From the NCBI RefSeq assembly GCF_001194135.2, contig NC_068989.1:96822158-96881196 (forward strand): 59,039 nucleotides of DNA, in the 5' to 3' direction. Shown piece after piece: positions 6,413 through 47,741 of this stretch. Source of the DNA: Octopus bimaculoides (Eukaryota). Position 1 is the stretch's first letter; each line of letters opens with the position of its first letter. The notes below the pieces were generated by a model that worked only from the letters and a program-made list of their open reading frames with translations, was not told where the DNA came from and did not search any database. Made by a program: the position numbers and the translations under genes.

Positions 6413-6463
6413 TATTTCGAACCGGGTTTCAAGTTATTTTAGCAAACTATCATCAGCGAAATA
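6413..6463 (-). ncRNA. Minimal type I hammerhead ribozyme motif (Penelope-type)
   Basis: Minus strand reads TATTTCG-CTGATGA-T AGTT tgctaaaat AACT T-GAAA-C CCG GT T-CGAAATA: 7-bp stem I, intact CUGAUGA/GAAA core, 4-bp stem II, short near-palindromic stem III, GUU triplet. Confidence 0.75.
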
Positions 6464-11777: not shown

Positions 11778-11865
11778 GCCTCAGCTTGGTATCGATGTTT
11801 TCAAATGGGATGCTTGTCATTTGCCACTTGCCAGTCACAGTGTAGATGTTTTCATCACTGACTTG
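11778..11865 (+). CDS. THUMPD3: THUMPD3-like tRNA (guanine-N2)-methyltransferase, internal exon (88 nt; phase 2 in, phase 0 out)
   Basis: ttttcactttctag|G...TTG|gtagga; encodes PQLGIDVFKWDACHLPLASHSVDVFITDL, matching the WD..LPL...SVD...TD(L/M) motif of the UPF0020 methylase domain. Confidence 0.9.
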
Positions 11866-13838: not shown

Positions 13839-14591
13839 NNNNNNNNNNNNNNNNNNNNNNNNNNNNNNNNNNNNNNNNNNNNNNNNNNNNNNNNNNNNNN
13901 NNNNNNNNNNNNNNNNNNNNNNNNNNNNNNNNNNNNNNNNNNNNNNNNNNNNNNNNNNNNNNNNNNNNNNNNNNNNNNNNNNNNNNNNNNNNNNNNNNNN
14001 NNNNNNNNNNNNNNNNNNNNNNNNNNNNNNNNNNNNNNNNNNNNNNNNNNNNNNNNNNNNNNNNNNNNNNNNNNNNNNNNNNNNNNNNNNNNNNNNNNNN
14101 NNNNNNNNNNNNNNNNNNNNNNNNNNNNNNNNNNNNNNNNNNNNNNNNNNNNNNNNNNNNNNNNNNNNNNNNNNNNNNNNNNNNNNNNNNNNNNNNNNNN
14201 NNNNNNNNNNNNNNNNNNNNNNNNNNNNNNNNNNNNNNNNNNNNNNNNNNNNNNNNNNNNNNNNNNNNNNNNNNNNNNNNNNNNNNNNNNNNNNNNNNNN
14301 NNNNNNNNNNNNNNNNNNNNNNNNNNNNNNNNNNNNNNNNNNNNNNNNNNNNNNNNNNNNNNNNNNNNNNNNNNNNNNNNNNNNNNNNNNNNNNNNNNNN
14401 NNNNNNNNNNNNNNNNNNNNNNNNNNNNNNNNNNNNNNNNNNNNNNNNNNNNNNNNNNNNNNNNNNNNNNNNNNNNNNNNNNNNNNNNNNNNNNNNNNNN
14501 NNNNNNNNNNNNNNNNNNNNNNNNNNNNNNNNNNNNNNNNNNNNNNNNNNNNNNNNNNNNNNNNNNNNNNNNNNNNNNNNNNNNNNNNNNN

Positions 14592-14659
<68 letters not shown>

Positions 14660-14799
14660 CACAAGGAGAGAGAGAAAGAGAGGGTTAGATATATTGTATA
14701 CATGACTGAGTTCTACCTTTATAATATAATCTTTGTATGAGTCCTTTGCAAATCTGTTTCATGTAGCAAACTTTCTGAGTCCATTACAGAGTCGATGTG

Positions 14800-15250
14800 C
14801 AATACAGTTGTTGTTCTTGTTATTGTTGTTTAGCCCAAGGTAGGGCCCAATTGAGCAAATCTGTGGTGAAAGGCATTCCAGCCATAATCTTCCAACCAGT
14901 TTCTCCTTTTGTATCTCAGATTGCATTATCTGATGTATTCTTCCATTTTCAAAATAGAAGACTGAGATTTCAAAGAGATTTAATTGCTATATTTAAGCAG
15001 CTGAAGACCCTGCTGAAGCTCCTTCATTATAGTTGTTATTGTTTAAACCCAGATTAGCCTTAAGTATTTCTATGACCAAAGGCATTCCAGCTATTGTCAT
15101 CCCAACGTATACCTAAAACTAGATTATCTATTGTCCTCTTATTGAAGCTTAATCTTCAAATTACCTTCTGTGTGATTTGAGGGAGATTTAGCTGTTGTTT
15201 CTACTAGCCTGAATGTTCACCTAGAACTTCCCTCGCAGCTGACTGTAATA
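14800..15250. mobile_element. Decayed SINE-like repeats (ttgctgctatttctagcagg family)
   Basis: Internally duplicated segments (tttagcccaagg..aaaggcattccagc; gatttagctgttgtttct) that also resemble 28730-28950. Confidence 0.5.
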
Positions 15251-16649
15251 TCAATGATGAGATTATGAGGTGTAATTAAAATGTAGGGTGTTTTGGAGGT
15301 TTCGGGCCAGATATTGTAGAGGTATTAGGGATCGAGGGACAGGTGTAGTATTTGCAAAAAGGACATTTGAATATGTTTGGCTGGATGCAGTTAGGGGCTA
15401 AGGAATTTATATATATATATATNNNNNNNNNNTAAAATAGTGATCTCAAAGTTTTTTTCTGTTCTGAAGGAAGAAATCAAATGCAGGGAAGAGTAATGCA
15501 GTTAGAAAAAAGGAAATGAAAACTCTTGAGAAGCATGCAGAAAGCTAGTAGTGAAGAAGTAAAAGAAAAAGGAAACCTGGTTTTCAGGTGTCCATGGCTC
15601 TGTAAAAGCTTTGTTATTCTGTGCTCTGCTTATAATTCAAGCTTAGGAAATGTGGAGTTCAGAACCACTTGGAGGCTCCCAAAAGAAAAAAATGTATTTC
15701 CTCCAATTTTTAAACAGAAAGCTCCAATGTTTAGCTATTCTATATACATATTATGTTGAATTCCTCTAACAATCATTTTTGAGAATATTTTTTGTGAAAC
15801 AGTTCTTTGATAGTAGATGGAAAATTGTATATAAAGTCTTTGAAGCATTGTATTTTGGGGATTATTATTTTGTCTTTGCTGAGACAAGCTGTATCTTTTT
15901 TCTGCTCCAATGCCATCATTGCATAACTATTTTTTTTTAAATAGATTAGAGAATATTAACTTCTTTATATCCTGGAGAATTTCCAAAGAAAATAGAATGA
16001 ATAATTATTGAATAATTAAACAGTTTTAAGAATAATATTGACAACTATTGGGCTCTTGTGAGTAAATAAATGGATAGGAAAATATATAGTTAGAGAAATT
16101 GTCAAAATGTTAGGATTCCCAACTCTACCTCTTAAAAAAAAAGTATCCATAGGTTAAAATAATACATTGTGATGTTAAGCAATATTAAAGATTTTGTCTC
16201 CATCCAATGATTCCAAGGATAAATTCAGGTTTTTCTCATGTTCAACCCATGTCACCAAGGAATACTGATGCAAAATGTTGATGATCATATCTCTGTCCAT
16301 CTGTTTATCTGTGCATGTATGTGTGCATGTGAATTGGCAGAAGGAAAGAGGGAAATAAGAAATGGACAATATCAGAGGTTACAACAGAATAGACGAAAGC
16401 TTTAAAAGTGATGGACAAAATGTAAACACACCACGCACACACAAAAAAAGAAAAGAACAACCACAAAGGTTGTGCACAGTGGATAATAATGCTAGAAGAG
16501 GAAAAAGGGCAAGAAGCAGAGTGATGCTTCAGGTGAACCCTTGGTCAAAGTAGAATAAGAAACAAGATAAAAGATATCTGTTTGAAGCACATGTGTATCC
16601 TTCTGCTACATGTTGGAGAGAGAGGGAGAGAGAGAATGTGTGTGTAATG

Positions 16650-17073
16650 GGCTTCTTTAAGTTTCCATCTACTATATCTACTTAAAAAGCTTTGGTCGGC
16701 CTTGGGCTATAGTAGAAAACACTTGACCAAGATGTTGTACAATGGAACTGAATCCAAAGCCATATTGTTGCAAAATGAACCTCTTACTCATGGAACCATG
16801 CTCTGTCCTGGCTCCTGTGCAGGTGGCACGTAAAAAACACCATTTTGAGCATGGCCATTGCCAATACTGCATGACTGGCCCTCGTCCTGGTGGCACGTAA
16901 AAGCACCTACTACACTCTCAGAGTGGTTGGCATTAGGAAGGGCATCCAGCTGTAGAAACTTTGCCAGATCAGATTGCAGCCATCTGGTTTGCCAGTCCTC
17001 AGTCAAATCGTCCAACCCATGCTAGCATGGAAGGCAGACGTTAAACGACGATGATGATGATGATGATGATGAT

Positions 17074-17075
<2 letters not shown>
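16650..17075. mobile_element. SINE A 5' half (-) fused to an RTE-tail repeat (+)
   Basis: tttcagtttccatctac..ctttggtcggccttgggctatagtagaa on -, then the standard tail ending in (GAT)n at about 17075. Confidence 0.8.
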
Positions 17076-17117
<42 letters not shown>

Positions 17118-17156
17118 CACACCTAAGCATACATATATCCTCAGAAACTCTTATTT

Positions 17157-17195
17157 GTCTCTGATGATGGACTATTCCAGAAAAAGCTCCAAGAC
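17157..17195 (+). ncRNA. Degenerate minimal hammerhead motif (probably inactive)
   Basis: GTCT-CTGATGA-TGGA ctat TCCA-GAAA-A AGCT CC A-AGAC: stems I and II and the core are intact, but the triplet is CCA (not NUH) and stem III is broken. Confidence 0.55.
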
Positions 17196-17894
17196 TGAAT
17201 TTTTTCCAATAATAATAATGTATAGTCTACTCTGCATTGTTGTACCATTCCAGACATGTTACATTTCATTAACAATACACAATATTTCCATCAAACTACA
17301 ATACTTTCATATATATCTATATATCTATATCTATATCTATCTATCTATATATATATATATATACACACACACATACACATACATACATACATAAACACAT
17401 ATTCACATGCCCAAATACATGCAGATACAGGCATGCATGTGCACCCATATATGTCCAAATATATATTTTTGCGTAATATATATCTTCATAAATACATAGC
17501 TGTAGAGGTGTTTGCAGGTCTAAATATTTCTTTAATTTCATGCTTACATGGATCCCATATAAATATACATACATACATGCCCTGATATACATAGACACAT
17601 ATATACCTCTATATATATAAATATATATATATAGAATATATGAGGAGTTTTTGTCAGGGTGACTCAAACTTAAAGGTACGCACTCTGAGTGCTCAAATCA
17701 GTATGCCACTAAAATTCTGGTTTGAATTGCAGCCAAACATTGTGATTTTGTGACTGCCTTTTTAAAGTGGCAATAAGGGGGCTTTCCTTTCAGCAGGTAG
17801 ATATAGATTAAAGCAGAAATGAAAAGGCAAATGGTTTTGCAAGACTTGACAAGGATATTCGACTTAGCTATATGATAAAAAGGTATACATAGGT

Positions 17895-18054
17895 GCAGAA
17901 GTGGCTGTGTGGTAAGTAGCTTGCTTACCAAGTACATGGTTCCAGGTTCAGTCCCACTGCATGGCACCTTGGGCAAGTGTCTTCTACTATAGCCTCGAGC
18001 CAACCAAAGCCTTGTCAGTGGATTTGGTAGACAGAAACTGAAAGAAACCCATCG

Positions 18055-18089
<35 letters not shown>

Positions 18090-18272
18090 TTACCCCCCAA
18101 CATCGCTTGACAACTGATGGTGGTGCGTTTACGCCCCCATAACTTAGCGGTTCGGCAAAAGAAACCGATAGAATAAATACTAGGCTTACAAAAAATAAGT
18201 CTTGGGGTCGATTTGCTCGACTCAAGGCGGTGCTCCAGCATGGCCGCAGTCGACTGAAACAAGTAAAAGAAT
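17895..18272 (+). mobile_element. SINE family A, full-length copy with an internal (TA)n/(TG)n tract
   Basis: tRNA-like head (gtggctgtgtggtaag...ggttcagtccc) and gactgaaacaagtaaaaga tail; near-identical copies at 32107-32625 and 54876-55285. Confidence 0.9.
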
Positions 18273-18784
18273 AGTATCTAACAGTTGTTTCTAGAATATT
18301 CCAACTATTGGAATCTAAGTCAAGCAAGCATTCCATAGGCCAAGTATAGCATCATCAGAGAGGGAGAGGTTAAACAGATGTAAAAGTGGAGAAACATTGT
18401 TCATCAATGGTATCATTGTGGTTCATTTTGTGAAGAAAGAGAGGAGAAATCCAATTAAATGTTCAATTAAAATAGATAATAATTAGGCAAATCTATGAAG
18501 AAATGAAGAAAAGCAGTAATGTCCATTCATAGAATGAAAACAGAGAGAATGGCTTGATTAGAATCGATGGCAAGTGGAAATGGATATTAGCAGTTTCTTT
18601 GTTAGATAAAGAACGAATCCATGAAGTGAATCCAGTGGCATGTGCCTCCTGTTGATGACATCAGGTAGCTCAATACTGTGAATAGGCTTTAAACATCATC
18701 GTACTCCCAATCTATAATATAATAAAATTCTGAAGCATCTGTGCCAGTGACATGTAAAAGCACCGATGCTGATGACATGTAAAA

Positions 18785-18810
18785 GGGTTAGGGTTAGGGT
18801 TAGGGTTAGG
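18785..18810 (+). repeat. Interstitial telomeric repeat (GGGTTA)4GG inside an RTE-tail copy
   Basis: Read directly. Confidence 0.9.
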
Positions 18811-19873
18811 AAGGGGCTGCAGCCATAGAAAGCAAGTCAGGACCAGGCCGGAACCGGGTACAGCTCTCCAGTTGACCAGTTCCAGTCAAGCCATCTAACC
18901 CATGCCAGCATGGAAAGCAGATGCTAAATGATGATGATGATGATGATGGTGATGGTGATGGTGATGGTGATGATGTAGTAGTAGTAGTAGTACAAGGGGG
19001 TGCTGAAAATGTTCTGGCTTTAAAGGTTTGTGAAAGGCCTGGTTGGAGGCCCAAACTGCTGAATTCTTTTGCAGAGCCTAGAAAAACTGAAGAACCACTA
19101 AAAAATGTGTGTGAATCTGAGAGTGGTGGGGGGGATATGTTGAATAAAATCATAATTAACTGATTCTCCTGTATTCTCTTTTACCTAAAGCCAGGAACTT
19201 TTCATCACCCCTCCCCCCTCATATGTGTGGGAGTGTTTGTATATACGAGTGTCTTCTATATATCAATATATGTTTATCTATGCATCATTTCATGTTTAGA
19301 TATCTGTTTATACATACTCTTGCCTAAAAATTTACAGATATATTCAGTAGTACAATATAGCATTGAAACTAAAAAACATGGTTAATGCACAATGAGCTTA
19401 TTAATTGGCTGAATCAGTTGACATAAGCTTTTAGGAATAATGGATTTATAAGCAGTGTTTCTGTGGACAGTCAAAGTGTAGACTTAATCCCTGATGAAAT
19501 CCCAACAGTACGAACAACCCTTTTGCTTCCAACCCACATCAGACCACTTTTGATTGTAGAAACTTCCCTTTTTAAAGTGATCTAAAACCCTCCGTCAAAT
19601 TTTCTTATGTTCCTAACACCAACTTCAGTAAAATTATTTCAGTAAATTCTTTGTTATTTTAAAAATCAATTAAGTAAAAGCATTGTATTTCAAGAGAAAT
19701 ATGGAAACAAAATGATTAAAACCAGTTCAGTAGAACCCTCGTTTTCTGCCCATAAAGTTATTGTATATAAAGACAAGGTGTTTGCATCTGCCTTTGCATA
19801 GTAGTGTTGGGTAGAAGTGATCACATTTGTTTCCCATGCTGGTATGAGTTGCCCTGTTTGACAGAAACTGACA

Positions 19874-20008
19874 TGCCAGGGGACTATGCCAGGGGACTGT
19901 GCCAGGGGACTATGCCAGGGGACTGTGCCAGGGGACTGTGCCAGGGGACTGTGCCAGGGGACTGTGCCAGGGGACTGTGCCAGGGGACTATGCCAGGGGA
20001 CTGTGCCA
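19874..20008. repeat. 13-bp GC-rich minisatellite (TGCCAGGGGACT[G/A])x10
   Basis: Ten units plus a partial unit, embedded in a minus-strand RTE-tail copy (about 19800-20130). Confidence 0.95.
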
Positions 20009-21670
20009 AGCTCACCTGCCTCATATGGCATTGTTTCTACAGCTGGATATCATTCCTAATGCCAACCACTTTACTGAGAGTGTACTGGATGTCTTTTACA
20101 TGACGCCAGCACTAGTGAAGTGAAATAACTCATGAGACAAGACCTCCCCCCTCCACAACTGAGTGGGAGTGAGGAGAGAGGTGGCTCTATGGTAGGTGAG
20201 GAGAGATGAAAGTATTGTAACAGGATGTCTTGCTGTAAGGGAGACACATGTTTATCCTAGTTGGAAAAGCAAGAAGATGGCAGTGTGTCAGGCTACAAGA
20301 AAGTGACTCTAAGAGAAGGGCAGAGGGATAGAGATAGAGATAGGGGGAAACGCAAGAGGCAGATATAACATCAGCAACATATTCAATAGGTGCAATACAA
20401 TAAACTTTATTACAAAACTGGATCCATGATCTTTCCCCCCCCCCCCCAAAAAAAAAGAATGAAAAATATTTGCAAATGGCGGTGCCCCAGCATGGCCACA
20501 GCTCATGAGCTGAAACTAGATAAAATGAAATATGCCAACCAATTGGCAAAACAAAACAACAAAAAGAACCAATCATATCTTTTTCCTTTCCCTTTCTTTT
20601 TTTTTTCAGCGTATTTGTGTGGGTGGGTTTATAAGTATATAAATAGGTAAGTTCATTGTGAAATATAGAAATCTAATGCTTTAAAACAATGAAATATTTG
20701 GGAATAGTAAAAATTGGTTATTCAGCATGGAAGTATATTTTTACAATTTAATATTAAAACTAATTGTATTTTTTTTAAAATATACCTATTGAACTATTAT
20801 AACAGTTGGGTTTACTTGTTTGTTTGTTTGGGTTTGGTTTTCTTTTTCTCCATCAAAAATTTTCTTTCATATTTATGCATTCATTACTATATTTTTGCAA
20901 TATATGTGAGTGAGCATGTGTGTGTACCTAAACATGCATATTTGTGTGTGTGTACACACGCACACACATATGCATGCATAAATACACACACACACACACA
21001 CATATATATATATCACTACATTTTGCTATATATATATATATATATATACACATACATACATTCCCATATATATATAGATATANNNNNNNNNNNNNNNNNN
21101 NNNNNNNNNNNNNNNNNNNNNNNNNNNNNNNNNNNNNNNNNNNNNNNNNNNNNNNNNNNNNNNNNNNNNNNNNNNNNNNNNNNNNNNNNNNNNNNNNNNN
21201 NNNNNNNNNNNNNNNNNNNNNNNNNNNNNNNNNNNNNNNNNNNNNNNNNNNNNNNNNNNNNNNNNNNNNNNNNNNNNNNNNNNNNNNNNNNNNNNNNNNN
21301 NNNNNNNNNNNNNNNNNNNNNNNNNNNNNNNNNNNNNNNNNNNNNNNNNNNNNNNNNNNNNNNNNNNNNNNNNNNNNNNNNNNNNNNNNNNNNNNNNNNN
21401 NNNNNNNNNNNNNNNNNNNNNNNNNNNNNNNNNNNNNNNNNNNNNNNNNNNNNNNNNNNNNNNNNNNNNNNNNNNNNNNNNNNNNNNNNNNNNNNNNNNN
21501 NNNNNNNNNNNNNNNNNNNNNNNNNNNNNNNNNNNNNNNNNNNNNNNNNNNNNNNNNNNNNNNNNNNNNNNNNNNNNNNNNNNNNNNNNNNNNNNNNNNN
21601 NNNNNNNNNNNNNNNNNNNNNNNNNNNNNNNNNNNNAAGACTAACTTTTGTTTCTTTATCATTATTATTG

Positions 21671-21718
<48 letters not shown>

Positions 21719-22317
21719 TTATTTATATATATATATATATTATATTTATTTATTACAGTACACATATATGAGTAATTAAAATTTCAACCTCTAGAGATTG
21801 TATTGTAGCAGCCTTATAATATTGCTTTTAATAGTTTCAATCTCTGCCTCCGGAAAGATATATCTCTATTTTACAAAAAGCAATGTGAGAATAAAAATAT
21901 ATAATAATAATAATAATATAAATAACATATATAAGAAAATATAAATGAAGAAATTTTTTGTGAAAAAGAAACACAGCAAGAGAAATGCTATCCTTATGAA
22001 ACACATGAGTGATTAGTTGTTTGGGAATTATGAAAAGAAGTAGGACTCTTATTAGGTTCACACAAATAGAACAAGACACACACACACACACATGTGTCAA
22101 TAATAATGATATGTAAAGGAAAACATACCTGTTTATGTGTGTGTGTGTGTGTGTGCGTGTGTGTGCGTGTGCGCACCTGAAATATAAGGTCATTGTATTT
22201 ATGTGTATATAAATACACACACACGCATTAGGATTATGCTCATCTATTATATTTGTACATATATATATATATATATACACATACACACACAAACACGTAC
22301 ACATATACTCACGCATA

Positions 22318-22358
<41 letters not shown>

Positions 22359-23322
22359 NNNNNNNNNNNNNNNNNNNNNNNNNNNNNNNNNNNNNNNNNN
22401 NNNNNNNNNNNNNNNNNNNNNNNNNNNNNNNNNNNNNNNNNNNNNNNNNNNNNNNNNNNNNNNNNNNNNNNNNNNNNNNNNNNNNNNNNNNNNNNNNNNN
22501 NNNNNNNNNNNNNNNNNNNNNNNNNNNNNNNNNNNNNNNNNNNNNNNNNNNNNNNNNNNNNNNNNNNNNNNNNNNNNNNNNNNNNNNNNNNNNNNNNNNN
22601 NNNNNNNNNNNNNNNNNNNNNNNNNNNNNNNNNNNNNNNNNNNNNNNNNNNNNNNNNNNNNNNNNNNNNNNNNNNNNNNNNNNNNNNNNNNNNNNNNNNN
22701 NNNNNNNNNNNNNNNNNNNNNNNNNNNNNNNNNNNNNNNNNNNNNNNNNNNNNNNNNNNNNNNNNNNNNNNNNNNNNNNNNNNNNNNNNNNNNNNNNNNN
22801 NNNNNNNNNNNNNNNNNNNNNNNNNNNNNNNNNNNNNNNNNNNNNNNNNNNNNNNNNNNNNNNNNNNNNNNNNNNNNNNNNNNNNNNNNNNNNNNNNNNN
22901 NNNNNNNNNNNNNNNNNNNNNNNNNNNNNNNNNNNNNNNNNNNNNNNNNNNNNNNNNNNNNNNNNNNNNNNNNNNNNNNNNNNNNNNNNNNNNNNNNNNN
23001 NNNNNNNNNNNNNNNNNNNNNNNNNNNNNNNNNNNNNNNNNNNNNNNNNNNNNNNNNNNNNNNNNNNNNNNNNNNNNNNNNNNNNNNNNNNNNNNNNNNN
23101 NNNNNNNNNNNNNNNNNNNNNNNNNNNNNNNNNNNNNNNNNNNNNNNNNNNNNNNNNNNNNNNNNNNNNNNNNNNNNNNNNNNNNNNNNNNNNNNCATAC
23201 ATATATATATATACACATACATATACATACATATGTATATACATACACACCCACATACCTACATACATATATATCTATACACATATATATACACACACAT
23301 ACAAAACATTACCCACACACAT

Positions 23323-23355
<33 letters not shown>

Positions 23356-23589
23356 CATATCTACATATAAGTACATACACACATATACATACATACACAC
23401 ATACATATACATACACATACCCATATACATATATACACACACATATACATACATACATACATACACATAAATACACACATTTTTCCACGTATACCTATGC
23501 ATATGTATATACACTTGCATATATATATTATTCTTGTTTCAGTCATTTGACTCTGGCTATGCTATCTCATATAATATATAATACATGTA

Positions 23590-23810
23590 GAACAAAGACA
23601 GAGTTCAAAAGTCATTCTTGAGCCATAGGCTCTATTCTGTTCTGGATAGGATGCCTGTTCATTGCAGGATTGCTCATTTCTGCAAGCTGAGTGGACAGAA
23701 ACAAGATAATCGGAAGCATTTTTCTCAAGAACACAATGCATCTTCCACTCCAGGAATTGAAACCACAATCTTATGATCATGAGTGCAATACCCAAGCCAC
23801 TAAACAATAC
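23590..23810 (-). mobile_element. tRNA-derived SINE (family C), decayed
   Basis: Minus strand gtgtattgtttagtggcttgggtattgcactcatgatcataagattgtggtttcaattcctgg has A/B-box-like segments; related copy at 36108-36290 (+). Confidence 0.65.
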
Positions 23811-24034
23811 ACCATCACATATTATGCATATATATCTGTTTTATATAAATGAACAAGCTGTTTGTACATTCACAAAATTGTACTTGACAAGTTCTAGAGA
23901 GGAATGAAAGCGCTAATAATAATGAAGAAATAAAAGGATTTTTTTTTTCCAAAATTCTGATGACTTTTTTTCTCAATATTCAATTCTGTACATCACACCT
24001 AATGCTCTATACATACATACATACATATATATCA

Positions 24035-24634
24035 CATCGTCGTTTAACGTCCGCTTTCCATGCTGGCATGGGTTGGACAATTTGACTGAGGATTTGTGAA
24101 ACCAGATGGCTACACCAGGTTCCAATCTGATTTGGCAGAGTTTCTACACCTGGATGCCCTTCTTAACGCCAACCACTCTGAGAGTGTAGTGGGTGCTTTT
24201 ACGTGCCACCGGCACGAAGGCCAGTCGGGCGGTACTGGCAACGGCCACGCTCAAAATGGTGCATTTTACGTGCCACCCACACAGGAGCCAGTTCAGCGGC
24301 ACTGGCAACGATCTCGCTCAAATGTCTTTACACATGCCATCTGGCACAGGTGCCATGACGATTTCGCTTTCGCTTACTTCAACAAGTCTTCACAAGCTGA
24401 GTTTTGTGTCCAATGAAGGAGACAACGTTGGCATGGGTGCCAGTTGTCGAATTTATTTCGATTTCGATTTCACTTGCCTCAACAGGTCTTCGGAAGTGGA
24501 GTTTTGTGTCCAATGAAGGAAGGTACGCATAAGTGGACTGGCTGAGGCCTTAGATTTAGGTCTCACTTGGCTTGCCTGGTCTTCTCACGCACAGCATATT
24601 TCCAGAAGTCTCGGTCAGAAGTTATCGCCTCGGT
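24035..24634 (-). mobile_element. RTE-tail repeat with an internal duplication, cut by a gap
   Basis: Standard tail reversed; gagttttgtgtccaatgaagga occurs twice. Confidence 0.9.
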
Positions 24635-25114
24635 NNNNNNNNNNNNNNNNNNNNNNNNNNNNNNNNNNNNNNNNNNNNNNNNNNNNNNNNNNNNNNNNNN
24701 NNNNNNNNNNNNNNNNNNNNNNNNNNNNNNNNNNNNNNNNNNNNNNNNNNNNNNNNNNNNNNNNNNNNNNNNNNNNNNNNNNNNNNNNNNNNNNNNNNNN
24801 NNNNNNNNNNNNNNNNNNNNNNNNNNNNNNNNNNNNNNNNNNNNNNNNNNNNNNNNNNNNNNNNNNNNNNNNNNNNNNNNNNNNNNNNNNNNNNNNNNNN
24901 NNNNNNNNNNNNNNNNNNNNNNNNNNNNNNNNNNNNNNNNNNNNNNNNNNNNNNNNNNNNNNNNNNNNNNNNNNNNNNNNNNNNNNNNNNNNNNNNNNNN
25001 NNNNNNNNNNNNNNNCTTCCTAAAAATATATTACTGCTCTAATATTTTAGAGTGTGCTTCTTTTTCACATGTATATATGTGTGAGTGTGTAGTGGATGTG
25101 TGTATGTGTGTGTG

Positions 25115-25149
<35 letters not shown>

Positions 25150-25150
25150 T

Positions 25151-25435
25151 AGAAAATAACATAGACAGCTATACACAATGTAAATCCACAAAGGAGAAAT
25201 TCACTCATCACTAAATGTGACTGATGGTGCTGGTTAGTACCTGTATTGTTAGAAATAAGTATTGGGGCATTAATCCCCCTTGTCAGTATGAAAATGTGTT
25301 TCCTTGAAGTTGTAAGGGTTTTAACTCTTATTTCTAGCAATATAGGTACGACCCAGCACCCTCAGTCACATTTAGTGACAATTGAATTTCTCCTTTTCGG
25401 TTTTATATTGCACAAAGCTTTTTACGTCATTTCTT
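25151..25435. repeat. About 285-bp foldback (arms of about 110 bp), MITE-like
   Basis: Left arm 25151-25259 is the reverse complement of right arm 25327-25435 with scattered mismatches; the ORF track shows mirror-image ORFs at 25149-25340 (-) and 25246-25440 (+). Confidence 0.9.
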
Positions 25436-25540
25436 GGTAATTTTCAGATTAGCATTTCGCTAACTCAGCCTTAAATCTATATGGTAACTCTATATGCTGA
25501 CAGCCTGGATTTAGCCAAACCATTTGACAATGGAATAATG

Positions 25541-25573
25541 ACTGCTGATGAGTCTGCAATCTTACAGACAAAA
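25541..25573 (+). ncRNA. Truncated hammerhead 5' half
   Basis: CTGATGA-GTCTG caatctta CAGAC-AAAA: perfect 5-bp stem II, G12 replaced by A, 3' half replaced by a SINE A fragment. Confidence 0.45.
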
Positions 25574-25577
25574 TCTA

Positions 25578-25780
25578 ATGTGTTTGTCTCCCCACCACCA
25601 CCATCGCTTGTCGACTGATGTTGGTGCATTGATGTCCCAATAAGTTAGCAGTTTGGCAAAGAGACTGAGAGAATAAGTGCTATACTTACAATAAGTCCTG
25701 GGGTTGATTTCATTGACTAAAACTCTTTAAGGCAGTGCTCCAGCATGGCCACAGTGAAATGACTGAAACAAGTAAAAGAA
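25578..25780 (+). mobile_element. SINE A 3' half
   Basis: tgtgtttgtctccccaccaccaccatcgcttg...gactgaaacaagtaaaaga. Confidence 0.85.
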
Positions 25781-26567
25781 TATATAAACATATGAGTATA
25801 TATAAAATACATATATAGTTCTTATCGATAGTTTCATCCTTCTTACTTATTTTAGTTATTATTATTATTATTTTTTTCACCATGACATTCTCTCTCATCT
25901 GCCTACAATCACCCAGCTTAGCATTTACCTTTTACCTTGGCAATAACAATAATAGTAATTATCATTATTTTAAATTTATCTTTTTAATATTTATTATAAC
26001 AATAACAAGAATAATATCATTAAAATATTATCTTAAATAATAATTACATCAGACTCCAACGCCAGTTGTTTTTACTTTTCCCCTTCCTTGGTTCAGCAAA
26101 TCTTTCCCAGTAAATCTGCATTCACTGGGTAACTTCACTTACATTTTTTCGATCTATTCCTTGTGAACATGTTTATTATTTCATCACATGATAGTTTTGT
26201 ACATTACGTCACCATTTATTTAGGTTCATAACCGTATATTAATATGATACAATACTATGGGTGTTTAATTTTTATTTATTATATTTACATTCTCCACTTA
26301 GTTTTACCTCAGTTTGTTTAAATAAGGAGTTAGAAAATATAATGAATTCATTGGATCCTCTCCCTTCCTCCTTTTCTGGTTTTTAGTTTGGCCCTCCATT
26401 TTGCCTTCCTCTAATTTAAACTTTTAGTATAGCGTTCATAGCCTCTCTCCCTTAATAATGCCCTGTAAACCAGCGTCCTTGTTTCTAACGGTCACTTACT
26501 TTACTATAAAATGTTATAACCCACACGTAACCTTAACATTTAGCATAAGTCTTGCTTTTTGTATGTT

Positions 26568-26658
26568 GGTTCCCTGAAGATGAATTTATGTGCAATTCCA
26601 GCAGCTCTTATTTCTTTGGAGTAGAGTGCACATATATTTTGAAACATATGTAGGAATT
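26568..26658 (+). ncRNA. Minimal type I hammerhead ribozyme with an extended stem II, sense to THUMPD3
   Basis: GGTTCC-CTGAAGA-T-[gaatttATGTGCA..attcca..tggagt..TGCACATatattt]-T-GAAA-C ATAT GT A-GGAATT; palindromic ACATATGT stem III, GUA triplet (predicted cut after 26652), stem I with 4 Watson-Crick and 2 GU pairs. Confidence 0.8.
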
Positions 26659-26897
26659 AAAGGAACTTATTGATTATATGCGTTTTGCTCCATTTATTAA
26701 TATTCTTCATAAAATACATATATATATATATCTTCATCGTCATCATCATCATTTAACATCTGTGTTCCATGCTATGTATGTATGTATGTATGAAATGCAC
26801 AGGTGTAGTATCAAATATATTTGTGAATACATTGCAAACAGAAAAAAATAAATGATCCCAAGTAATGTTAAATGTCTATTTTTCTTTCTAATTTCAG

Positions 26898-26911
26898 CCG
26901 TTCGGGAAAAG
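26898..26911 (+). CDS. THUMPD3: THUMPD3 14-nt microexon (PFGK + AG of Arg)
   Basis: ttttctttctaatttcag|CCGTTCGGGAAAAG|gttagt; supplies the conserved PFGKR motif, and its phases (0 in, 2 out) join the flanking exons exactly. Confidence 0.9.
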
Positions 26912-27087
26912 GTTAGTAGATCTTACTTTACTAAAATCCTCTTCCTTATTTATCATCCAACTTAGGCCACTGGAAATAATAACCAGAAACAGAAAGTAAT
27001 TAGTAGAATGTCATTTTTATTTACATTATCATAATTTTAACCCCCTTTGTTCAGAGTTCTCATCTTGTTAAAATAAGCAGCAAAGCT

Positions 27088-27827: not shown

Positions 27828-28346
27828 NNNNNNNNNNNNNNNNNNNNNNNNNNNNNNNNNNNNNNNNNNNNNNNNNNNNNNNNNNNNNNNNNNNNNNNNN
27901 NNNNNNNNNNNNNNNNNNNNNNNNNNNGAAGAATATGTGAAACATTTTTCAAATTTTTACTTTATTTTTATTTATTGTTTGAAAACCCCTAAAGTTATAA
28001 TCCTAATCTTTAATGGCTGGGTTGGAGATGAAAGCTTGTTGTTATGTCTTCTTGGTTCAGCCATTTCAACTAGTTCAGCTTTGTGGTTTTATTGTTAATC
28101 TTTAAGCATGTTAGGCTTCTTAGAATGGGAGAAAAACTTCATAAATGAAGTCATTCCGGAATAATTAATAAGTTTGCATCAATTCCAAGATTTCATGAAT
28201 AGTTTGAAAATTAAATTAGAAATAATTCTGAATCTTGCTCCACATTAAAAGCTTAATTTTCAGCAAAGTGTAACCCCTGCAATGAAGTTGATGCATCTAT
28301 GTTTAATTAAACCGGTTATAGCTGTATTCCAACAGAAGAGAATTCA

Positions 28347-28619
28347 CCAGTGCTGCTGGACTGGCTCCTGTGCAGGTGGCACTTAAAATACACCATTTTG
28401 AGCGTGGCCGTTGCCAGTATCGCCTGACTGGCCTTCGTGCCAGTGGCACGTAAAAGCACCCACTACACTCTCGGAGTGGTTGGCGTTAGGAAGGGCATCC
28501 AGCTGTAGAAACTCTGCCAAATCAGATTGGAGCCTGGTGTAGCCATCTGGTTCACCAGTCCTCAGTCAAATCATCCAACCCATGCTAGCATGGAAAGCGG
28601 ACGTTAAACGATGATGATG
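28347..28619 (+). mobile_element. RTE-tail repeat, low divergence
   Basis: Standard tail ending ggaaagcggacgttaaacgatgatgatg; inverted relative to 24035-24305. Confidence 0.9.
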
Positions 28620-30141
28620 AAGAAAGAAAAGAAGAGGAACTTTCATTCTTTTTCTCTTTTGTCTTTTAGTTCATTTTTTTGTTTGTTTGTTTTCTTTATG
28701 AGGGTTTTCTAAAAATCTTTTTAGTTAGGCATTGCAGACACCCTGTTAAAGACCTCTGAAACTGGTAAGAGGGAGCAAGATATCCTCAAACCAGAAAGAA
28801 GCCTGGCCTGGAGACTGCAATAGAGCTGACTCAGACTTTGACAATTCCTCCAACCAAACAGCTGCAGTAGTGGTGTTTGGGTATAATAATAGGGAAATTT
28901 TGCTGCTATTTCTAGCAGGTTGAGTGATCATATAGAGATGTCTTTAATAACTTGCTTTCTCTAAAATTAATGAAATGAGGGGAGGATTAGTCAAAATAGA
29001 AATTGTAAAATTAAAATCCCAAGTAATTGCTAGTTCAGTGGTTTTAGATGAAGGATAAGACAGGCACAAAAAACCAAAATCCACTAGGAGAAAGAAAATA
29101 TCAAAGTAGAAAGATCCTTTTGTCAAGTTTCTTATAAGAAAAGATTTTACTTTGGTGCTTATGACATCATTGAACAGGGAATAGAGAATTATCAGATCTA
29201 GAACAGCTGAGTCAAGACCAAACTCTGCAAGCTGAACCGAAGCCAGGGTGGTGTGTTCTGTTGTTAAATGACAAAAAGTAGACAGAGCCTTGAGAATGGA
29301 AATTAATCAGTCGCAAGTAGTGATATCAAATTTTGCTGCTGGATGCAAAAGTACAATTGTGGGAGGTTAACTTACTGTACAAACATTTCACATAAAAAAT
29401 GTGAAATGTTCTGAATTGCAAAGTCTGTCATTTTCTGTGAATTTGTAAGGAATCAGGATGTTATCAAGAAGTGTATCTGAAATAATAGAGAAACACAAAG
29501 GTTTTTCTTTGTTTCTCTTCTCAATGTGATGTTTGTGTTGACTAGTAAGGTTAATTTACTTAAGCCTTACGGAGCATAAGCCATCAACCACTTTCCTCTG
29601 TTGTTCTCCATTCTGGGCTGTCTTTTCTACTTCTCTTCCACAAGATCCTTGCTTTTCTTTACAGTTTCCTTTTTGATTTAGTCGCACTGCTTCATATAAG
29701 TTCCCTGAAGGAAGACCCTTCTCTTTCAGGTACAGTTGGTTTTGAATTATCATTAATGTTTCTGTAACTTTGAATTTTTTATTCTAAGTAGGGTTTGTTG
29801 GCCCTATGCAAACTCATTTTTACCCATGAGAAGTTAGTCCATGTCAGCCTGACCTTTATCTTTTGGTCTATGCAGCATGGGATGCACTACTATGAGCTTG
29901 CACTCCATAGGAATAGCGATCTGGGCCACTGAGGCACAGAAGCCACCACACCACATCAAGGAGTACACCTTGAATGATAAAAGGACTATCCCAAGTCATA
30001 TGAATAGGGGACCAACTATCAAGGTTAGCATGGTTAGAGAAGCGAAGTTAAATGAAGATAAGAAGAGCAGCTGGTTTAACAGATATAGTAGTTGAAGACC
30101 TCAAGATATGTGTCATATGTTATACGATAAAACCTTTACAG

Positions 30142-32106: not shown

Positions 32107-32625
32107 TTGGACCGACCAAAGCCTTGTGAGTGGATTTGGTAGACGGAAACTGAAAGAAGCCCATCGTATATATGTATGTGTATGACATAGTGTGTCATAT
32201 GTGTTTGTAAAAATAAACGGATTAATTAATTAATTAATTAATTAACAGAGTACAGTGTCTGCAAGTTGATGAGTATCTCATATTCCCCTCCATTTTCTTA
32301 TTGCTATATATATATATATATNNNNNNNNNNNNNNNNNNNNNNNNNNNNNNNNNNNNNATATGTATGTATATATGCATGTATGTATATATGCATGTATGT
32401 ATATATATGTGTATGTATTTGTGTGTCTATGTTTCTCCCCCCAACATTGCTTGATATGCAATGCTGGTGTGTTTACGTCCCCATAACTTAGCAGTCCAGC
32501 AAAAGAGACCGATAGAATAAGTACTAGGCTTACAAAGAATAAGTCCTGGGGTCGATTTGCTCGACTAAAGGCGGTGCTCCAGCATGGTCGCAGTCAAATG
32601 ACTGAAACAAGTAAAAGAATAAAAG
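32107..32625 (+). mobile_element. SINE A, 5'-truncated, spans a gap
   Basis: gaccaaagccttgtgagtggatttggtagacggaaactg...gactgaaacaagtaaaagaataaaaga. Confidence 0.8.
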
Positions 32626-36334: not shown

Positions 36335-38650
36335 GCCAAAGTATCATCTGTCAAGAGTAGTAAGGAATCACCAACAAATGGTGGATACAGCAATGCACTG
36401 AGTGTATTCTCTACAGGAAAAGATAGAGGTGATTCCAGAAGATGTGTCATGATGAAAGCTTCACTGCTGTGAGCTGTAGGGTTGGTTTCAATGAATCTAC
36501 CATTCATTCTAACACAAAGGCATCTGATCCTAAAAAAAAAAAAAGACACAGATGAGTGTATACGCTACAGGAAAAGTCAGAGATGATCAAGAAAATCCAT
36601 GCTAATGGAAGGTTTGCTGCTGTAGGGCGTGAGTTTGATATCAATTAATCTACAATTTGTTCCGTGTAAGGTGAGGGTTGGCAATGAGTATAATGAAGAG
36701 TTCTGGGTAGAAGTAGGGGTTCACCAAAGATCAGTCTTCAGCCCACTCTTATTCATTATAGTCCTCCAGGCATTAACAGAGGAATTCAAAACAGGCTGCC
36801 CCTGGGAGCTCCTCTATGCTGATGACATTGCTCTAATAGCTAACTCATTGCCAGAACTGGAGACAAAGTTTAGGGTGTGGAAGCAAGGTCTAGAATCGAA
36901 GGGCTTTAGGATTAACTCGGCAAAAACCAAAGTCTTAGTAAGTAGGAAGGCAGTCAAATCACAATCCCCTTCAGGTAGATGGCCCTGCTCAATCTGTAGA
37001 AAAGGTGTGGGTAGAAATTCCATACGATGTACCCAGTGTAAGCTATGGACACATAAAAGGTGTAGCAATATGAAAGGTTAACCAGGAAAATAGTTTTTGT
37101 GTGTGGCAGATGCACTGGAGCAATAAACACTGAAGATGTACGGAAAACAGATTCCATCACATGCCAGGGGGAGAAACTAGAAGTAGTTAATAGTTTCCGC
37201 TACCTAGGCGAGCAAGTCTGCAGTGGGGGTAGTTGCTCTGAGAGTGTAATGACTAGAGTAAGAATAGCCTGGGCAAAGTTTAGGGAGCTCCTACCTCAGC
37301 TGGCAACTAAGGGCCTCTCATTCAGGATGAAAGGTAGACTGTATGATGTATGTGTGCGAACTGTCATGCTACCCGGCAGTGAAACCTGGGCTGTAAGGCA
37401 GCGATTTGGCAGAAACGTTAGCACGCTGGGCGAAATGCTTATCAGGATTTCGTCGTCTGCCGCTACGTTCTGAGTTCAAATTCCATTGAGGTCGACTTCA
37501 CCTTTCATCATTTCGGGGTCGATTAAATAAGTACCAGTTACACACTGGGGTCAGTATAATCGACAATCCGTTTGTCTCTCCTTGTTTGTCCCCTCTGTAT
37601 GTAGCCCCTTGTGGGCAGTAAAGAAATGAGAAACATGGGCTGTGATGCTGATGACATGTGTAGGCTTGAAACAAATGATCCGCTGGATGTGTAATGTCAG
37701 TGTGCATAAACGGCAGAGTGTAAGAGGCCTGAGAGGAAAGCTGGGCATAAGAAGCATCAAATGTGGTTTGCAAGAGAGGTGACTGCGCTGGTATGGTCAT
37801 GTGTTACATATGGATGAGGACAGCTGTGTGAGGAAGTGTCACACCCTATCTGTGGAAGAGGCAGACCCAAGAAGACATGAGATGAGGTGGTGAAGCATAA
37901 CCTTTGAATGCTGGGCCTCACAAAGGCAATGACAGGAGACCGAGACCTTTGGAGATATGCTGTGATTGAGAAGGCCAAGTAACTAAAGTGAAATCGCAGC
38001 CATGGCTGATGCCAGTGTTGCATGTCCGGCCCATTTAAGAGGACCCTTGATGCGTCAGGTGATATGATATGTTTGAGAAGACCCGTTGAGTCAAGTGAAA
38101 CCAATATCGTAGCTGTGGCCAGTGCTGCCTGGCTGGCTTCTCTGCCAGTGGCATGTAAAATGCACCATCCAAACATGGTTGATGCCAGTGCCCTCTGACT
38201 GGCTCTCACGCTGGTGGCACGTAAAAAGCACCATCTGAACATGGGCAATGCCAGATCTGCTTGACTGGCTCCCATGCTGATGGCACATAAAAGGCACCAT
38301 CCGAATGTGGTCAAATCCAGTCCCCACAACTGGCTCCCATGCTGGTGGCATGTAAAAGGCACCATCCAAAAGTTGTCAAGGCTAGTGCCTCCCAGCTGGT
38401 TCCCATGCTGGTGGCATGTAAACAGCACTGTTCGAATGTGAAAAATGCCATGGCTGCTTGACTGGCTCCCATGCCGTTGGCACATAAAAAGCACCCACTA
38501 CACTCTTGGAGTGGTTGGCGTTAGGAAGGGCATCCAGCTGTAGAAACATTGCCAGATGAGGTTGGAGCCTGGTGCAGCCACTGGCTTTCCATACCTTAGT
38601 CAAACCATCCAACCCATGCCAGCATGGAAAATGGACATTAAACGATGATG
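36335..38650 (+). mobile_element. RTE-like LINE: RT domain, PHD finger, C-terminus and 3' UTR; interrupted by SINE B
   Basis: ORF 36629-37081 (GVHQRSVFSPLLFIIVLQAL...LLYADDIAL), C4HC3 finger, then RWYGHV and (GAT)n tail. Confidence 0.95.
37395..37629 (+). mobile_element. SINE B inserted into the LINE with a 14-bp target site duplication
   Basis: GAAACCTGGGCTGT (37381-37394) and GAAACATGGGCTGT (37630-37643) flank the SINE; the LINE frame (ETWAV) resumes afterwards. Confidence 0.9.
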
Positions 38651-39654: not shown

Positions 39655-39820
39655 TCATCATCATCATCATCATCATCGTTTAACGTCCGCCTTCCATGAT
39701 AGCATGGGTTGGATGATTTGACTGAGGACTGGCGAACCGGAACGCTGCACCAGGCTCCAATCTGATCTGGCAGAATTCCTACAGCTGGATGCCCTTCCTA
39801 ATGCCAACCACTCCGAGACG
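39655..39820 (-). mobile_element. RTE-tail repeat, truncated
   Basis: (CAT)n-cgtttaacgtccgccttccatg...ccaaccactccgag. Confidence 0.85.
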
Positions 39821-47617: not shown

Positions 47618-47741
47618 AAGTGGCTCAAAGAAAAACAACTGGAAATTATATCCGGCAGTAATGTATGAAATGGCACGGGTTGCCAAGCTGAACACTGGTC
47701 GGGCCTGTCTTCTTACCCAGGACAAAAAGTGCATGTTTAAG
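47618..47741 (+). CDS. THUMPD3: THUMPD3 internal exon (124 nt; phase 2 in, phase 0 out)
   Basis: ttttattttgtttag|A...AAG|gtaaga; encodes (R)SGSKKNNWKLYPAVMYEMARVAKLNTGRACLLTQDKKCMFK, matching the THUMPD3 GSKK.NW.LYP..L.EM.RV....GRA.LLTQD motif rather than THUMPD2. Confidence 0.95.

What the first reader, a model, noticed from the sequence alone, without database searches (positions are those of the whole stretch)
26568..26658. Sense-strand intronic hammerhead about 240 nt upstream of the THUMPD3 microexon
Seen: intact CUGAAGA/GAAA core, GUA triplet, palindromic ACATATGT stem III, 6-bp stem I and an unusually long two-part stem II, all in the pre-mRNA orientation. The predicted cut after 26652 is 245 nt before the microexon acceptor. 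Established: Penelope-associated minimal hammerheads cleave mainly as dimers, and intronic hammerheads have been retained in some vertebrate genes. Inference: cleavage here could affect recognition of a frame-shifting microexon, or release the end of the 15-kb intron. A lone copy may be slow or inactive.
Basis: partly seen in the sequence, partly recalled or inferred. Interest (0 to 1): 0.75.

Follow-up and report, generated by a model that had tools for sequence, protein, structure and literature searches.

The report
Lone hammerhead-like motif in THUMPD3 intron
A 91-base stretch in an intron of a THUMPD3-like gene has the layout of a small self-cutting RNA (a hammerhead ribozyme) and is unlikely to be pure chance, but it looks like a single weak leftover of a mobile element, not a regulator of the nearby 14-base exon.

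Summary
The gene context also holds: the motif lies sense-strand in a ~15-kb intron of a THUMPD3-like gene. The predicted cut is 245 nt before a 14-nt microexon that encodes PFGK of the catalytic DLPFG motif.

Rfam finds no hammerhead there. The hammerhead fold is at most 1% of the predicted ensemble. The first helix II pair (10.1/11.1) is a U.U mismatch, and helix II is 60 nt long.

A profile built only from four experimentally cleaving animal type-I hammerheads scores the motif 26.4 bits. That is p~0.005 per window under two different nulls. Its architecture matches axolotl HHR_Amex2: U.U at the helix II base, an 8-nt palindromic helix III and a GUA triplet.

I found a second, compact hammerhead at 6413-6463(-). 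A covariance model built from the same four ribozymes ranks it top in the window (22.9 bits, E~2e-4).

Best reading (~0.55): a genuine type-I hammerhead by descent, a solo retroelement-derived copy that is weak or inactive alone. Chance remains plausible (~0.3). A role in microexon splicing has no support (~0.05). Orthologous introns could not be fetched.

The parts
26566..26573 (+).
   Evidence: It pairs with 26653-26660 as 8 bp, two of them G.U.
26574..26580 (+). Core C3-A9: CUGAAGA
   Evidence: Exact match to CUGANGA.
26581..26640 (+). Helix II, a 60-nt imperfect hairpin with a U.U mismatch at its base (10.1/11.1)
   Evidence: 12 of the 14 core-proximal positions pair. The length is atypical for animal type-I hammerheads, which have 4-8 bp (PMC4209133).
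26641..26644 (+). Core G12 A13 A14 A15.1 (GAAA)
26644..26651 (+). Minimal helix III, the palindrome ACAUAUGU (A15.1-U16.1 and C15.2-G16.2 closing an AUAU loop)
   Evidence: It has the same length and form as ACACGUGU of axolotl Ax353 and ACGCGCGU of mussel Mg353.
26652..26653 (+). Predicted cleavage site, after A17 of the GUA triplet
   Evidence: Position follows from the motif geometry. Cleavage itself was not tested.
26653..26660 (+). Helix I, 3' strand (GGAATTAA)
26898..26911 (+). 14-nt microexon CCGTTCGGGAAAAG, encoding PFGK plus two bases of Arg (methyltransferase motif DLPFG)
   Evidence: It has an AG acceptor and a GTTAGT donor. The frame is kept only if it is included.
11778..11865 (+). 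Upstream exon of the THUMPD3-like gene (...PQLGIDVFKWDACHLPLASHSVDVFITDL)
47618..47741 (+). Downstream exon (SGSKKNNWKLYPAVMYEMARVAKLNTGRACLLTQDKKCMFK)
6413..6463 (-). Second, compact type-I hammerhead motif (UAUUUCG CUGAUGA U-AGUU-loop-AACU-U GAAA CCCGGU U CGAAAUA). It is antisense to the gene.
   Evidence: It is the top hit in the window for covariance model R1, which was built from four verified ribozymes: 22.9 bits, E~2e-4, with the next hit at 10.9 bits. The profile score is 32.7 bits.

Best explanation
The motif is a real type-I hammerhead ribozyme motif by descent. It belongs to the animal class carried by non-LTR retrozymes and Penelope-like elements. It has a perfect catalytic core, a minimal palindromic helix III, a U.U mismatch at the base of helix II and a GUA cleavage triplet.

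It sits as a single copy in the sense strand of a ~15-kb intron of a THUMPD3-like gene, most likely left there by a retroelement insertion (inferred). Alone it should cleave very slowly or not at all, for three reasons:
- Helix III is too short to hold the active fold in a monomer.
- No partner copy is present for the dimeric form.
- Helix I and the 60-nt helix II show no loop-loop contacts.

Any slow cleavage 245 nt upstream of the microexon would come after spliceosome commitment and would not change splicing (inferred from published intron-cleavage experiments). It is a passenger, not a regulator.
For: 1. All invariant hammerhead positions and all three helices are present. They align column for column with four ribozymes shown to self-cleave: coral Amil224, mussel Mg353, axolotl Ax353 and Ax330 (sequences from the PMC7229834 supplement).

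2. The unusual traits have an experimental precedent. Axolotl HHR_Amex2 (~60,000 copies) has a U.U at the base of helix II and a 2-bp helix III with a tetraloop. It cleaves 22% in 1 h as a monomer and much better as a dimer. Its ...U GAAAC ACGU GUA reads as ...U GAAAC AUAU GUA here.

3. A profile made only from those four ribozymes, with loop length left free, scores the motif 26.4 bits. The best background score in the window is 18.1. P(max>=26.4) is 0.0053 in 3000 Markov-3 windows and 0.005 in 400 scrambled-core profiles on the real window.

4. Scrambled-core descriptors on the real sequence give 0.0046 hits per window with a helix III this short.

5. The same window holds an independent second hammerhead at 6413-6463(-). 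An Infernal model of the four ribozymes ranks it first: 22.9 bits, E~2e-4 (rough), 12 bits above the noise. It shares the U.U mismatch. None of the 400 scrambled profiles had a second-best score of 20 or more. Hammerhead motifs of this style therefore do occur in this genome.

6. Low activity is expected.
   - The hammerhead-competent fold is 0.03-0.9% of the ensemble in four of five contexts of 91-491 nt, and far lower (7e-9) in the 291-nt context.
   - Single minimal Penelope-type motifs show no detectable cleavage (PMC4209133).
   - The homodimer does adopt the classic dimeric hammerhead fold, but with ddG of only -8.8 kcal/mol, about 0.6 uM, which is far above pre-mRNA levels.

7. Introns cut by a slow hammerhead still splice normally (Dye et al. 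2006, as cited in PMC2995048).
Against: - Rfam reports no hammerhead family here, even at E<=10 on a 103-nt slice.
- Infernal model R1 does not recover the full motif. It gives only a 7.3-bit partial alignment at 26610-26657, because helix II plus its loop is 60 nt.
- A helix II this long is atypical. It is also what chance hits look like: the median spacer among decoy hits is 36 nt.
- G10.1-C11.1, described as highly conserved in Penelope-type hammerheads, is absent.
- Nothing marks a retroelement around the motif. There is no tandem repeat, no other copy in the window, no flank similarity to the second motif or to the mussel and coral retrozymes, and no Penelope-style hit.
- The 3' half resembles the CA/TA microsatellite sequence that fills this window (repeat D3). 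ACATATGT occurs five times per strand.
- A p of 0.005 per 59-kb window still means hundreds of chance hits in a gigabase genome (inference), and the window was picked because of this motif.
- Conservation and cleavage are untested.
Confidence: 0.55

Rival explanations
1. The motif is a chance match. An AT-rich inverted repeat in microsatellite-like intronic sequence happens to be flanked by CUGAAGA and GAAA and by a short complementary pair of flanks. It has no ribozyme ancestry or activity.
For: - There is no Rfam hit, and Infernal model R1 gives only noise-level scores.
- The fold energy is not unusual (z = -0.58), and the hammerhead fold is at most 1% of the ensemble.
- The U.U at 10.1/11.1 and the 60-nt spacer are within what decoy hits show.
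- The 3' half is 75% identical to a (CA)n(TA)n tract.
- A relaxed descriptor gives 0.04-0.06 hits per window.
- There is no retroelement context.
- The finding was selected by eye from raw sequence.
Against: - Two independent nulls put the score at p~0.005 per window, and the short helix III form at 0.0046.
- A second motif, significant on its own and sharing the U.U, lies in the same window. No scrambled profile gave two scores of 20 or more.
- The architecture is identical to the verified HHR_Amex2.
Confidence: 0.3
2. The motif is a domesticated intronic ribozyme. Co-transcriptional self-cleavage 245 nt upstream of the microexon would tune recognition of the 14-nt exon, or speed turnover of the 15-kb intron, as proposed for the amniote intronic hammerheads.
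For: - It lies on the sense strand close to an essential microexon whose skipping destroys the frame.
- The catalytic core is perfect.
- Intronic type-I hammerheads conserved in amniote genes such as RECK are a precedent (PMC6155905).
Against: - There is no conservation or expression data.
- A minimal helix III without a partner copy predicts little monomer activity.
- The amniote intronic hammerheads match curated Rfam models, whereas this motif matches none.
- Slow intronic hammerheads do not alter splicing.
- Vertebrate retrozymes are depleted from introns, which suggests that active copies there are selected against (preprint 10.64898/2026.07.22.740005).
Confidence: 0.05
3. The 60-nt hairpin at 26581-26640 is the real feature, for example an intronic microRNA-like precursor or a splicing-related structure, and the hammerhead core around it is incidental.
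For: The hairpin dominates the predicted fold.
Against: The energy is ordinary for the composition (z = -0.58), there is no Rfam match of any kind to the hairpin, and the stem is AU-rich and weak.
Confidence: 0.02

Closest known systems
Type-I hammerheads of animal non-LTR retrozymes, especially axolotl HHR_Amex2 (construct Ax353) (PMC7229834)
   Same: Both are open at helix I (type I) and have a CUGANGA / GAAA core. Both have a U.U mismatch at the base of helix II, an 8-nt palindromic helix III (ACACGUGU there, ACAUAUGU here), a GUA triplet and a 6-bp helix I. Both are expected to work mainly as dimers.
   Different: The retrozyme copies sit in 330-350-bp tandem repeats and have a 3-4-bp helix II with a 5-nt loop. 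This motif is a lone copy with a 60-nt helix II, shows no tandem repeat and no similarity outside the motif, and comes from a different phylum.
Minimal hammerheads of Penelope-like elements (Cervera and de la Pena 2014, PMC4209133)
   Same: Both have a very short palindromic helix III, a helix II longer than usual and an extra U after A9. Both are expected to be inactive as a single motif.
   Different: Penelope-type motifs lie in the element's flanking repeats and come in pairs a few kb apart. They keep G10.1-C11.1 and have a 4-5-bp helix I. None of these was found here.
Conserved intronic hammerheads of amniotes (HH9 and HH10; RECK, CTCL, DTNB introns; PMC6155905)
   Same: Both are type-I motifs in the sense strand of an intron of a protein-coding gene.
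   Different: The amniote motifs are ultraconserved, match curated Rfam families and show conserved tertiary loop-loop interactions. This motif has a minimal helix III, no Rfam match and unknown conservation.
CPEB3 HDV-like intronic ribozyme
   Same: Both are small self-cleaving motifs in an intron of a host gene, where slow cleavage competes with splicing.
   Different: It is a different ribozyme class (a nested double pseudoknot) and is conserved across mammals. This comparison rests on background knowledge and paper titles and abstracts, not on a test made here.

Membership tests
Hammerhead ribozyme (any type) | Invariant core: C3 U4 G5 A6 N7 G8 A9, G12 A13 A14, the A15.1-U16.1 pair, and H17 (any base but G) at the cleavage site | tested here: met
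   CUGAAGA at 26574-26580, GAAA at 26641-26644, U at 26651 and A at 26652. These align with four verified ribozymes.
Hammerhead ribozyme (any type) | Three helices radiating from the core | tested here: met
   Helix I is 6-8 bp. Helix II pairs at 12 of 14 proximal positions and has a distal stem. Helix III is 2 bp with a tetraloop. The fold constrained to this shape is -16.6 kcal/mol against a minimum free energy of -18.7.
Hammerhead ribozyme (any type) | G10.1-C11.1 pair closing helix II | tested here: not met
   It is U.U here. The same mismatch occurs in the active axolotl HHR_Amex2, so this feature is common but not obligatory.
Hammerhead ribozyme (any type) | Match to curated covariance models (Rfam Hammerhead_1, _3, _II, HH9, HH10) | tested here: not met
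   There is no hit at gathering score or at E<=10 on 401-nt and 103-nt slices.
Hammerhead ribozyme (any type) | Core-dependent self-cleavage at the predicted site | not testable with these tools
   This needs in vitro transcription or mapping of RNA ends.
Hammerhead ribozyme (any type) | Conservation with compensatory changes in related sequences | not testable with these tools
   No DNA from a close relative could be reached. The metagenome pattern scans found nothing, including a control for the window's abundant SINE. Exact look-ups of window ORFs found nothing. The nearest exon relative is 83% identical, on a 1.2-kb contig.
Animal type-I hammerhead (retrozyme class) | Significant score against a model built from experimentally cleaving members | tested here: inconclusive
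   Infernal model R1 (four seeds) gives only a 7.3-bit partial match, because of the 60-nt helix II. A profile from the same seeds with loop length free gives 26.4 bits, p~0.005 per window. The second motif at 6413-6463(-) passes R1 at 22.9 bits, E~2e-4.
Animal type-I hammerhead (retrozyme class) | Short helix III (1-2 bp) capped by a small palindromic loop | tested here: met
   ACAUAUGU is an 8-nt palindrome. Only 8.7% of chance descriptor hits have a helix III this short.
Animal type-I hammerhead (retrozyme class) | Location in short tandem repeats (about 170-400 bp), each with one ribozyme | tested here: not met
   There is no tandem array and no second + strand copy in the window.
Animal type-I hammerhead (retrozyme class) | Loop 1 - loop 2 tertiary contacts (helix I about 6 bp with an internal loop; helix II about 4 bp with a loop) | tested here: not met
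   Helix I is a plain 8-bp stem with no internal loop, and helix II is a 60-nt hairpin. The mussel retrozyme ribozymes also lack most of these contacts.
Penelope-like element minimal hammerhead | Location in the flanking repeats of an element encoding RT plus GIY-YIG endonuclease, usually as two copies a few kb apart | tested here: not met
   The six-frame listing shows no RT-like ORF near 25-28 kb. A Penelope-style descriptor found nothing in the window, and there is no second + strand copy.
Penelope-like element minimal hammerhead | An unpaired base between A9 and 10.1, followed by a conserved G10.1-C11.1 and a 6-8-bp helix II | tested here: inconclusive
   The U after A9 can be read as the unpaired base, with G10.1 then pairing to U as a G.U wobble. 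That register gives only 3 bp before a bulge (reading; features).
Domesticated intronic hammerhead (amniote HH9/HH10 type) | Sense-strand intronic position in a protein-coding gene | tested here: met
   The motif lies in intron 11866-26897 of the + strand THUMPD3-like gene.
Domesticated intronic hammerhead (amniote HH9/HH10 type) | Deep conservation at the orthologous site | not testable with these tools
   See the conservation row above. In one distant relative (L001) the intron that creates the microexon does not exist.

The most novel reading that the evidence does not exclude
This genome may carry a lineage-specific family of type-I hammerheads with a U.U at the base of helix II. One copy would have been retained in the sense strand 245 nt upstream of an essential 14-nt microexon because slow co-transcriptional cleavage there helps define the microexon, or frees the 15-kb upstream intron for degradation. 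That would be a domesticated ribozyme acting in splicing of a tRNA methyltransferase gene.
Probability: 0.05. Interest if true: 0.75.

Novelty: new member of a known kind. Interest (0 to 1): 0.35.

Why it matters
If it is a true hammerhead, it adds one more solo type-I motif to the many thousands already catalogued in animal genomes. It would also extend the U.U-at-helix-II variant, so far described in axolotl retrozymes, to another phylum.

It would matter far more if the motif were conserved and active. Sense-strand intronic ribozymes with a host function are known only from a few amniote genes, and none sits next to a microexon.

The practical lesson concerns detection. Rfam missed both motifs in this window, while a small model built from four verified ribozymes found one of them clearly. 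Curated models may therefore undercount such ribozymes in AT-rich invertebrate genomes.

Tried and rejected
- **Rfam.** I ran it at gathering score on the whole window and at E<=10 on slices of 401, 301, 103 and 68 nt. No hammerhead family appeared for either motif. The only hits were weak C/D-box snoRNA look-alikes for the second motif, which has no D box.
- **Strict descriptors.** Requiring a paired 10.1-11.1, or the Penelope style with a bulge plus G-C, gave 0 hits.
- **One core mismatch allowed.** This added no further motif.
- **Very relaxed stems.** These added one noise-level hit at 18358(-).
- **Other copies and tandem repeats.** There are none in the window. The only repeats near the motif are a truncated SINE piece and microsatellites.
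- **Flank similarity.** There is none between the two motifs or to the mussel and coral retrozymes.
- **Retroelement context of the second motif.** It lies about 200 nt downstream of a non-LTR RT remnant (zf-RVT, E=3.5e-4, below Pfam's cut-off). Three other remnants of that kind in the window have no hammerhead downstream.
- **Protein search with that remnant.** It returned nothing at my E<=1e-10 threshold, which was too strict, so the search was wasted.
- **Orthologous DNA.**
  - The exon search found only short contigs (83% identity at best) and no close relative.
  - The metagenome pattern scans were empty, including the SINE control, so that negative says nothing.
  - Exact look-ups of two window ORFs were empty.
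- **Other negative checks.**
  - A PDB sequence search with the exon peptide found nothing.
  - A 15-nt direct repeat that brackets the motif and the microexon (26495 and 26922) is at chance level by my estimate.

Full report
**What is in the sequence.** On the + strand, 26566-26660 reads TTGGTTCC / CTGAAGA / a 60-nt hairpin / GAAA / CATATGT / A / GGAATTAA.
- It has the CUGANGA half of the core, a long helix II and the GAAA half of the core.
- Helix III is minimal: A15.1-U16.1 and C15.2-G16.2 close an AUAU loop, which makes the 8-nt palindrome ACAUAUGU.
- The cleavage triplet is GUA, with the cut after 26652.
- Every item in the finding is at the stated coordinates.

**Gene context.** Six-frame reading and splice-site inspection give three exons:
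- An exon at 11778-11865 that ends ...VDVFITDL|GT.
- A 14-nt exon at 26898-26911 (AG|CCGTTCGGGAAAAG|GT).
- An exon at 47618-47741.

Spliced together they read ...VDVFITDLPFGKRSGSKKNNWKLYPAVMYEMARVAKLNTGRACLLTQDKKCMFK. Leaving out the 14-nt exon shifts the frame into a stop codon. The 75-residue peptide finds relatives that carry Pfam PF01170, one of them named THUMPD3-like by NCBI (66% identity).

The microexon therefore encodes PFGK of the catalytic DLPFG motif and is essential. The motif lies in the pre-mRNA sense, and the predicted cut is 245 nt before the acceptor. The upstream intron is 15,032 nt as assembled and includes 2,724 N, so its true length is uncertain. In one distant relative (ENA contig L001) DMPFGKR is continuous with the preceding exon. 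The microexon thus exists because of an extra intron at DL|PF in this lineage. My tools could not verify the organism.

**Model-based tests that failed.**
- Rfam 15 reports no hammerhead at gathering score over the window, or at E<=10 on 401-nt and 103-nt slices.
- The 91-nt RNA does not fold preferentially as a hammerhead. The minimum free energy is -18.7 kcal/mol (z = -0.58 against shuffles), against -16.6 for the hammerhead-constrained fold.
- The hammerhead-competent shape is 0.03-0.9% of the ensemble in four of five contexts of 91-491 nt, and far lower (7e-9) in the 291-nt context.

**Chance tests.**
- Markov shuffles give 0.04-0.06 hits per window.
- Scrambled cores run on the real sequence, which keep its hairpins and microsatellites, give 0.03-0.05. 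Two or more hits occurred in 0.5% of 4000 decoys.
- Only 8.7% of decoy hits have a helix III as short as the animal type-I form. That gives 0.0046 such hits per window, or 0.0005 if the U.U is also required.
- Against this, decoy hits often have long spacers (median 36 nt). The 3' half of the motif resembles CA/TA microsatellite sequence, and ACATATGT occurs five times per strand.

**Comparison with verified ribozymes.** The literature changed my reading.
- Penelope-type minimal hammerheads keep G10.1-C11.1 and do not cleave as single motifs (PMC4209133).
- The axolotl retrozyme ribozyme HHR_Amex2 has a U.U mismatch at the base of helix II and a 2-bp helix III with a tetraloop, described as similar to invertebrate HHRs. 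It cleaves 22% in one hour as a monomer and much better as a dimer (PMC7229834).
- That paper's supplement gives four cleaving constructs. Ax353 reads CTGATGA-T-GCC...GGC-T-GAAAC-ACGT-GTA. The window motif reads CTGAAGA-T-GAAT...ATTT-T-GAAAC-ATAT-GTA (alignment A2).

I built Infernal model R1 from those four ribozymes alone and searched the window with filters off.
- The second motif, 6414-6462(-), is the top hit at 22.9 bits, E~2e-4 (rough calibration). Everything else scores 10.9 bits or less.
- The reported motif is not recovered in full. R1 gives only a 7.3-bit partial alignment, because a 60-nt helix II is heavily penalised.

I then built a position- and pair-specific profile from the same four seeds, with loop length free up to 70 nt.
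- It scores the second motif 32.7 bits and the reported motif 26.4 bits. The best background score is 18.1.
- P(max>=26.4) is 0.0053 in 3000 Markov-3 windows and 0.005 in 400 scrambled-core profiles on the real window. None of those 400 had a second-best score of 20 or more.

**What kind of element.** Nothing marks a retroelement around the reported motif.
- There is no tandem array and no other copy in the window.
- There is no Penelope-style hit and no RT-like reading frame nearby.
- There is no flank similarity to the second motif or to the mussel and coral retrozymes.
- The second motif lies on the same strand as a non-LTR RT remnant, about 200 nt downstream of it, and about 140 nt before an (AT)n tract. 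Three other remnants of that kind have no hammerhead downstream.
- A retroelement origin is therefore an inference from what is known of animal type-I hammerheads. It was not shown here.
- Orthologous or paralogous DNA from relatives could not be obtained.

**How it most likely behaves.** The architecture is shown. The rest is inferred.
- A monomer with a 2-bp helix III, a U.U at the helix II base and no loop-loop contacts should cleave slowly at best.
- The predicted homodimer is the classic dimeric hammerhead, but with a ddG of -8.8 kcal/mol (about 0.6 uM). That is irrelevant at pre-mRNA concentrations, and there is no second copy in cis.
- The acceptor, microexon and donor are transcribed a few seconds after the motif (my estimate). 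Introns cut by a slow hammerhead splice normally, and only fast ribozymes abort splicing (Dye 2006 and Fong 2009, as cited in PMC2995048).
- An effect on the microexon is therefore unlikely.
- Vertebrate retrozymes are reported to be depleted from introns (preprint 10.64898/2026.07.22.740005). This fits the view that tolerated intronic copies are the inactive ones.

**Verdict.** My estimates are:
- About 0.55 that it is a genuine type-I hammerhead by descent, a solo and probably inert copy.
- About 0.3 that it is a chance motif.
- About 0.05 that it has a host function.

It is a new member of a known kind and of modest interest. The second motif at 6413-6463(-) is the better-supported hammerhead in this window.

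Noticed in passing
window 6413-6463, minus strand: A second, compact type-I hammerhead motif: a 7-bp helix I, CUGAUGA, U.U plus a 4-bp helix II with a 9-nt loop, GAAA, ACCCGGU, and a GUU triplet. It is antisense to the THUMPD3-like gene. It is the top hit of a model built from four verified ribozymes (22.9 bits, E~2e-4). Rfam misses it.
   Followed up: yes
window 26898-26911; L001 9689-9712: The 14-nt microexon encodes PFGK (plus two bases of Arg) of the catalytic DLPFG motif. It sits between introns of about 15.0 and 20.7 kb, and skipping it causes a frameshift. In a distant relative (ENA contig L001) the same residues are continuous with the upstream exon, so the intron at DL|PF is lineage-specific.
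   Followed up: partly
window 6650-7240, 7482-7649, 44338-44511, 45490-45588, all minus strand: Decayed C-terminal remnants of non-LTR retrotransposon ORFs, with a zinc-knuckle zf-RVT match (E=3.5e-4) and a conserved ...KY..L..EI..W....VP.IVG.LG... tail. One ends about 200 nt upstream of the second hammerhead motif. The others have no such motif downstream.
   Followed up: partly
window 51008-53490 (+), 36626-37470 (+), 5130-6170 (-): LINE-type ORFs. There is a long stretch that looks by eye like an endonuclease plus RT, with an FTDD box (51.0-53.5 kb). There is an RT fragment with YADD (36.6-37.5 kb), and its 5'-truncated inverted relative lies at 5.1-6.2 kb (72-79% DNA identity).
   Followed up: no
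window about 4959-5310, 16808-17064, 24031-24355, 28347-28623, 38381-38655, 39660-39818, 46710-46876, 47106-47464: At least eight copies of a SINE-like repeat that contains TTTGACTGAGGACTGG. It includes a CUGAGGA heptamer but no GAAA half or helices, so it is not a hammerhead. A truncated piece lies at 26733-26775, just downstream of the reported motif.
   Followed up: partly
window 2427-2721, 12351-12539, 13839-14591, 15423-15432, 21083-21636, 22359-23195, 24635-25015, 27828-27927, 32322-32358, 46397-46439, 58076-58085: There are eleven runs of N (assembly gaps). Six fall in the '15-kb' intron (2,724 N), so intron lengths are approximate and sequence near the motif could be missing. The nearest gaps are 1.5 kb upstream and 1.2 kb downstream.
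   Followed up: no
window 11887-11916 (+): Just past the donor of the upstream exon, the intron translates in frame to FFPFSKSKSKKY. This loosely resembles PFGKRSGSKK, which the microexon and the next exon encode. The stretch is A/T-rich and low in complexity, so this is probably chance.
   Followed up: no
window 26495-26509 and 26922-26936 (+): A 15-nt direct repeat (CTTACTTTACTATAA / CTTACTTTACTAAAA, 427 nt apart) brackets the hammerhead motif and the microexon. By my rough estimate this is at chance level for AT-rich sequence.
   Followed up: no
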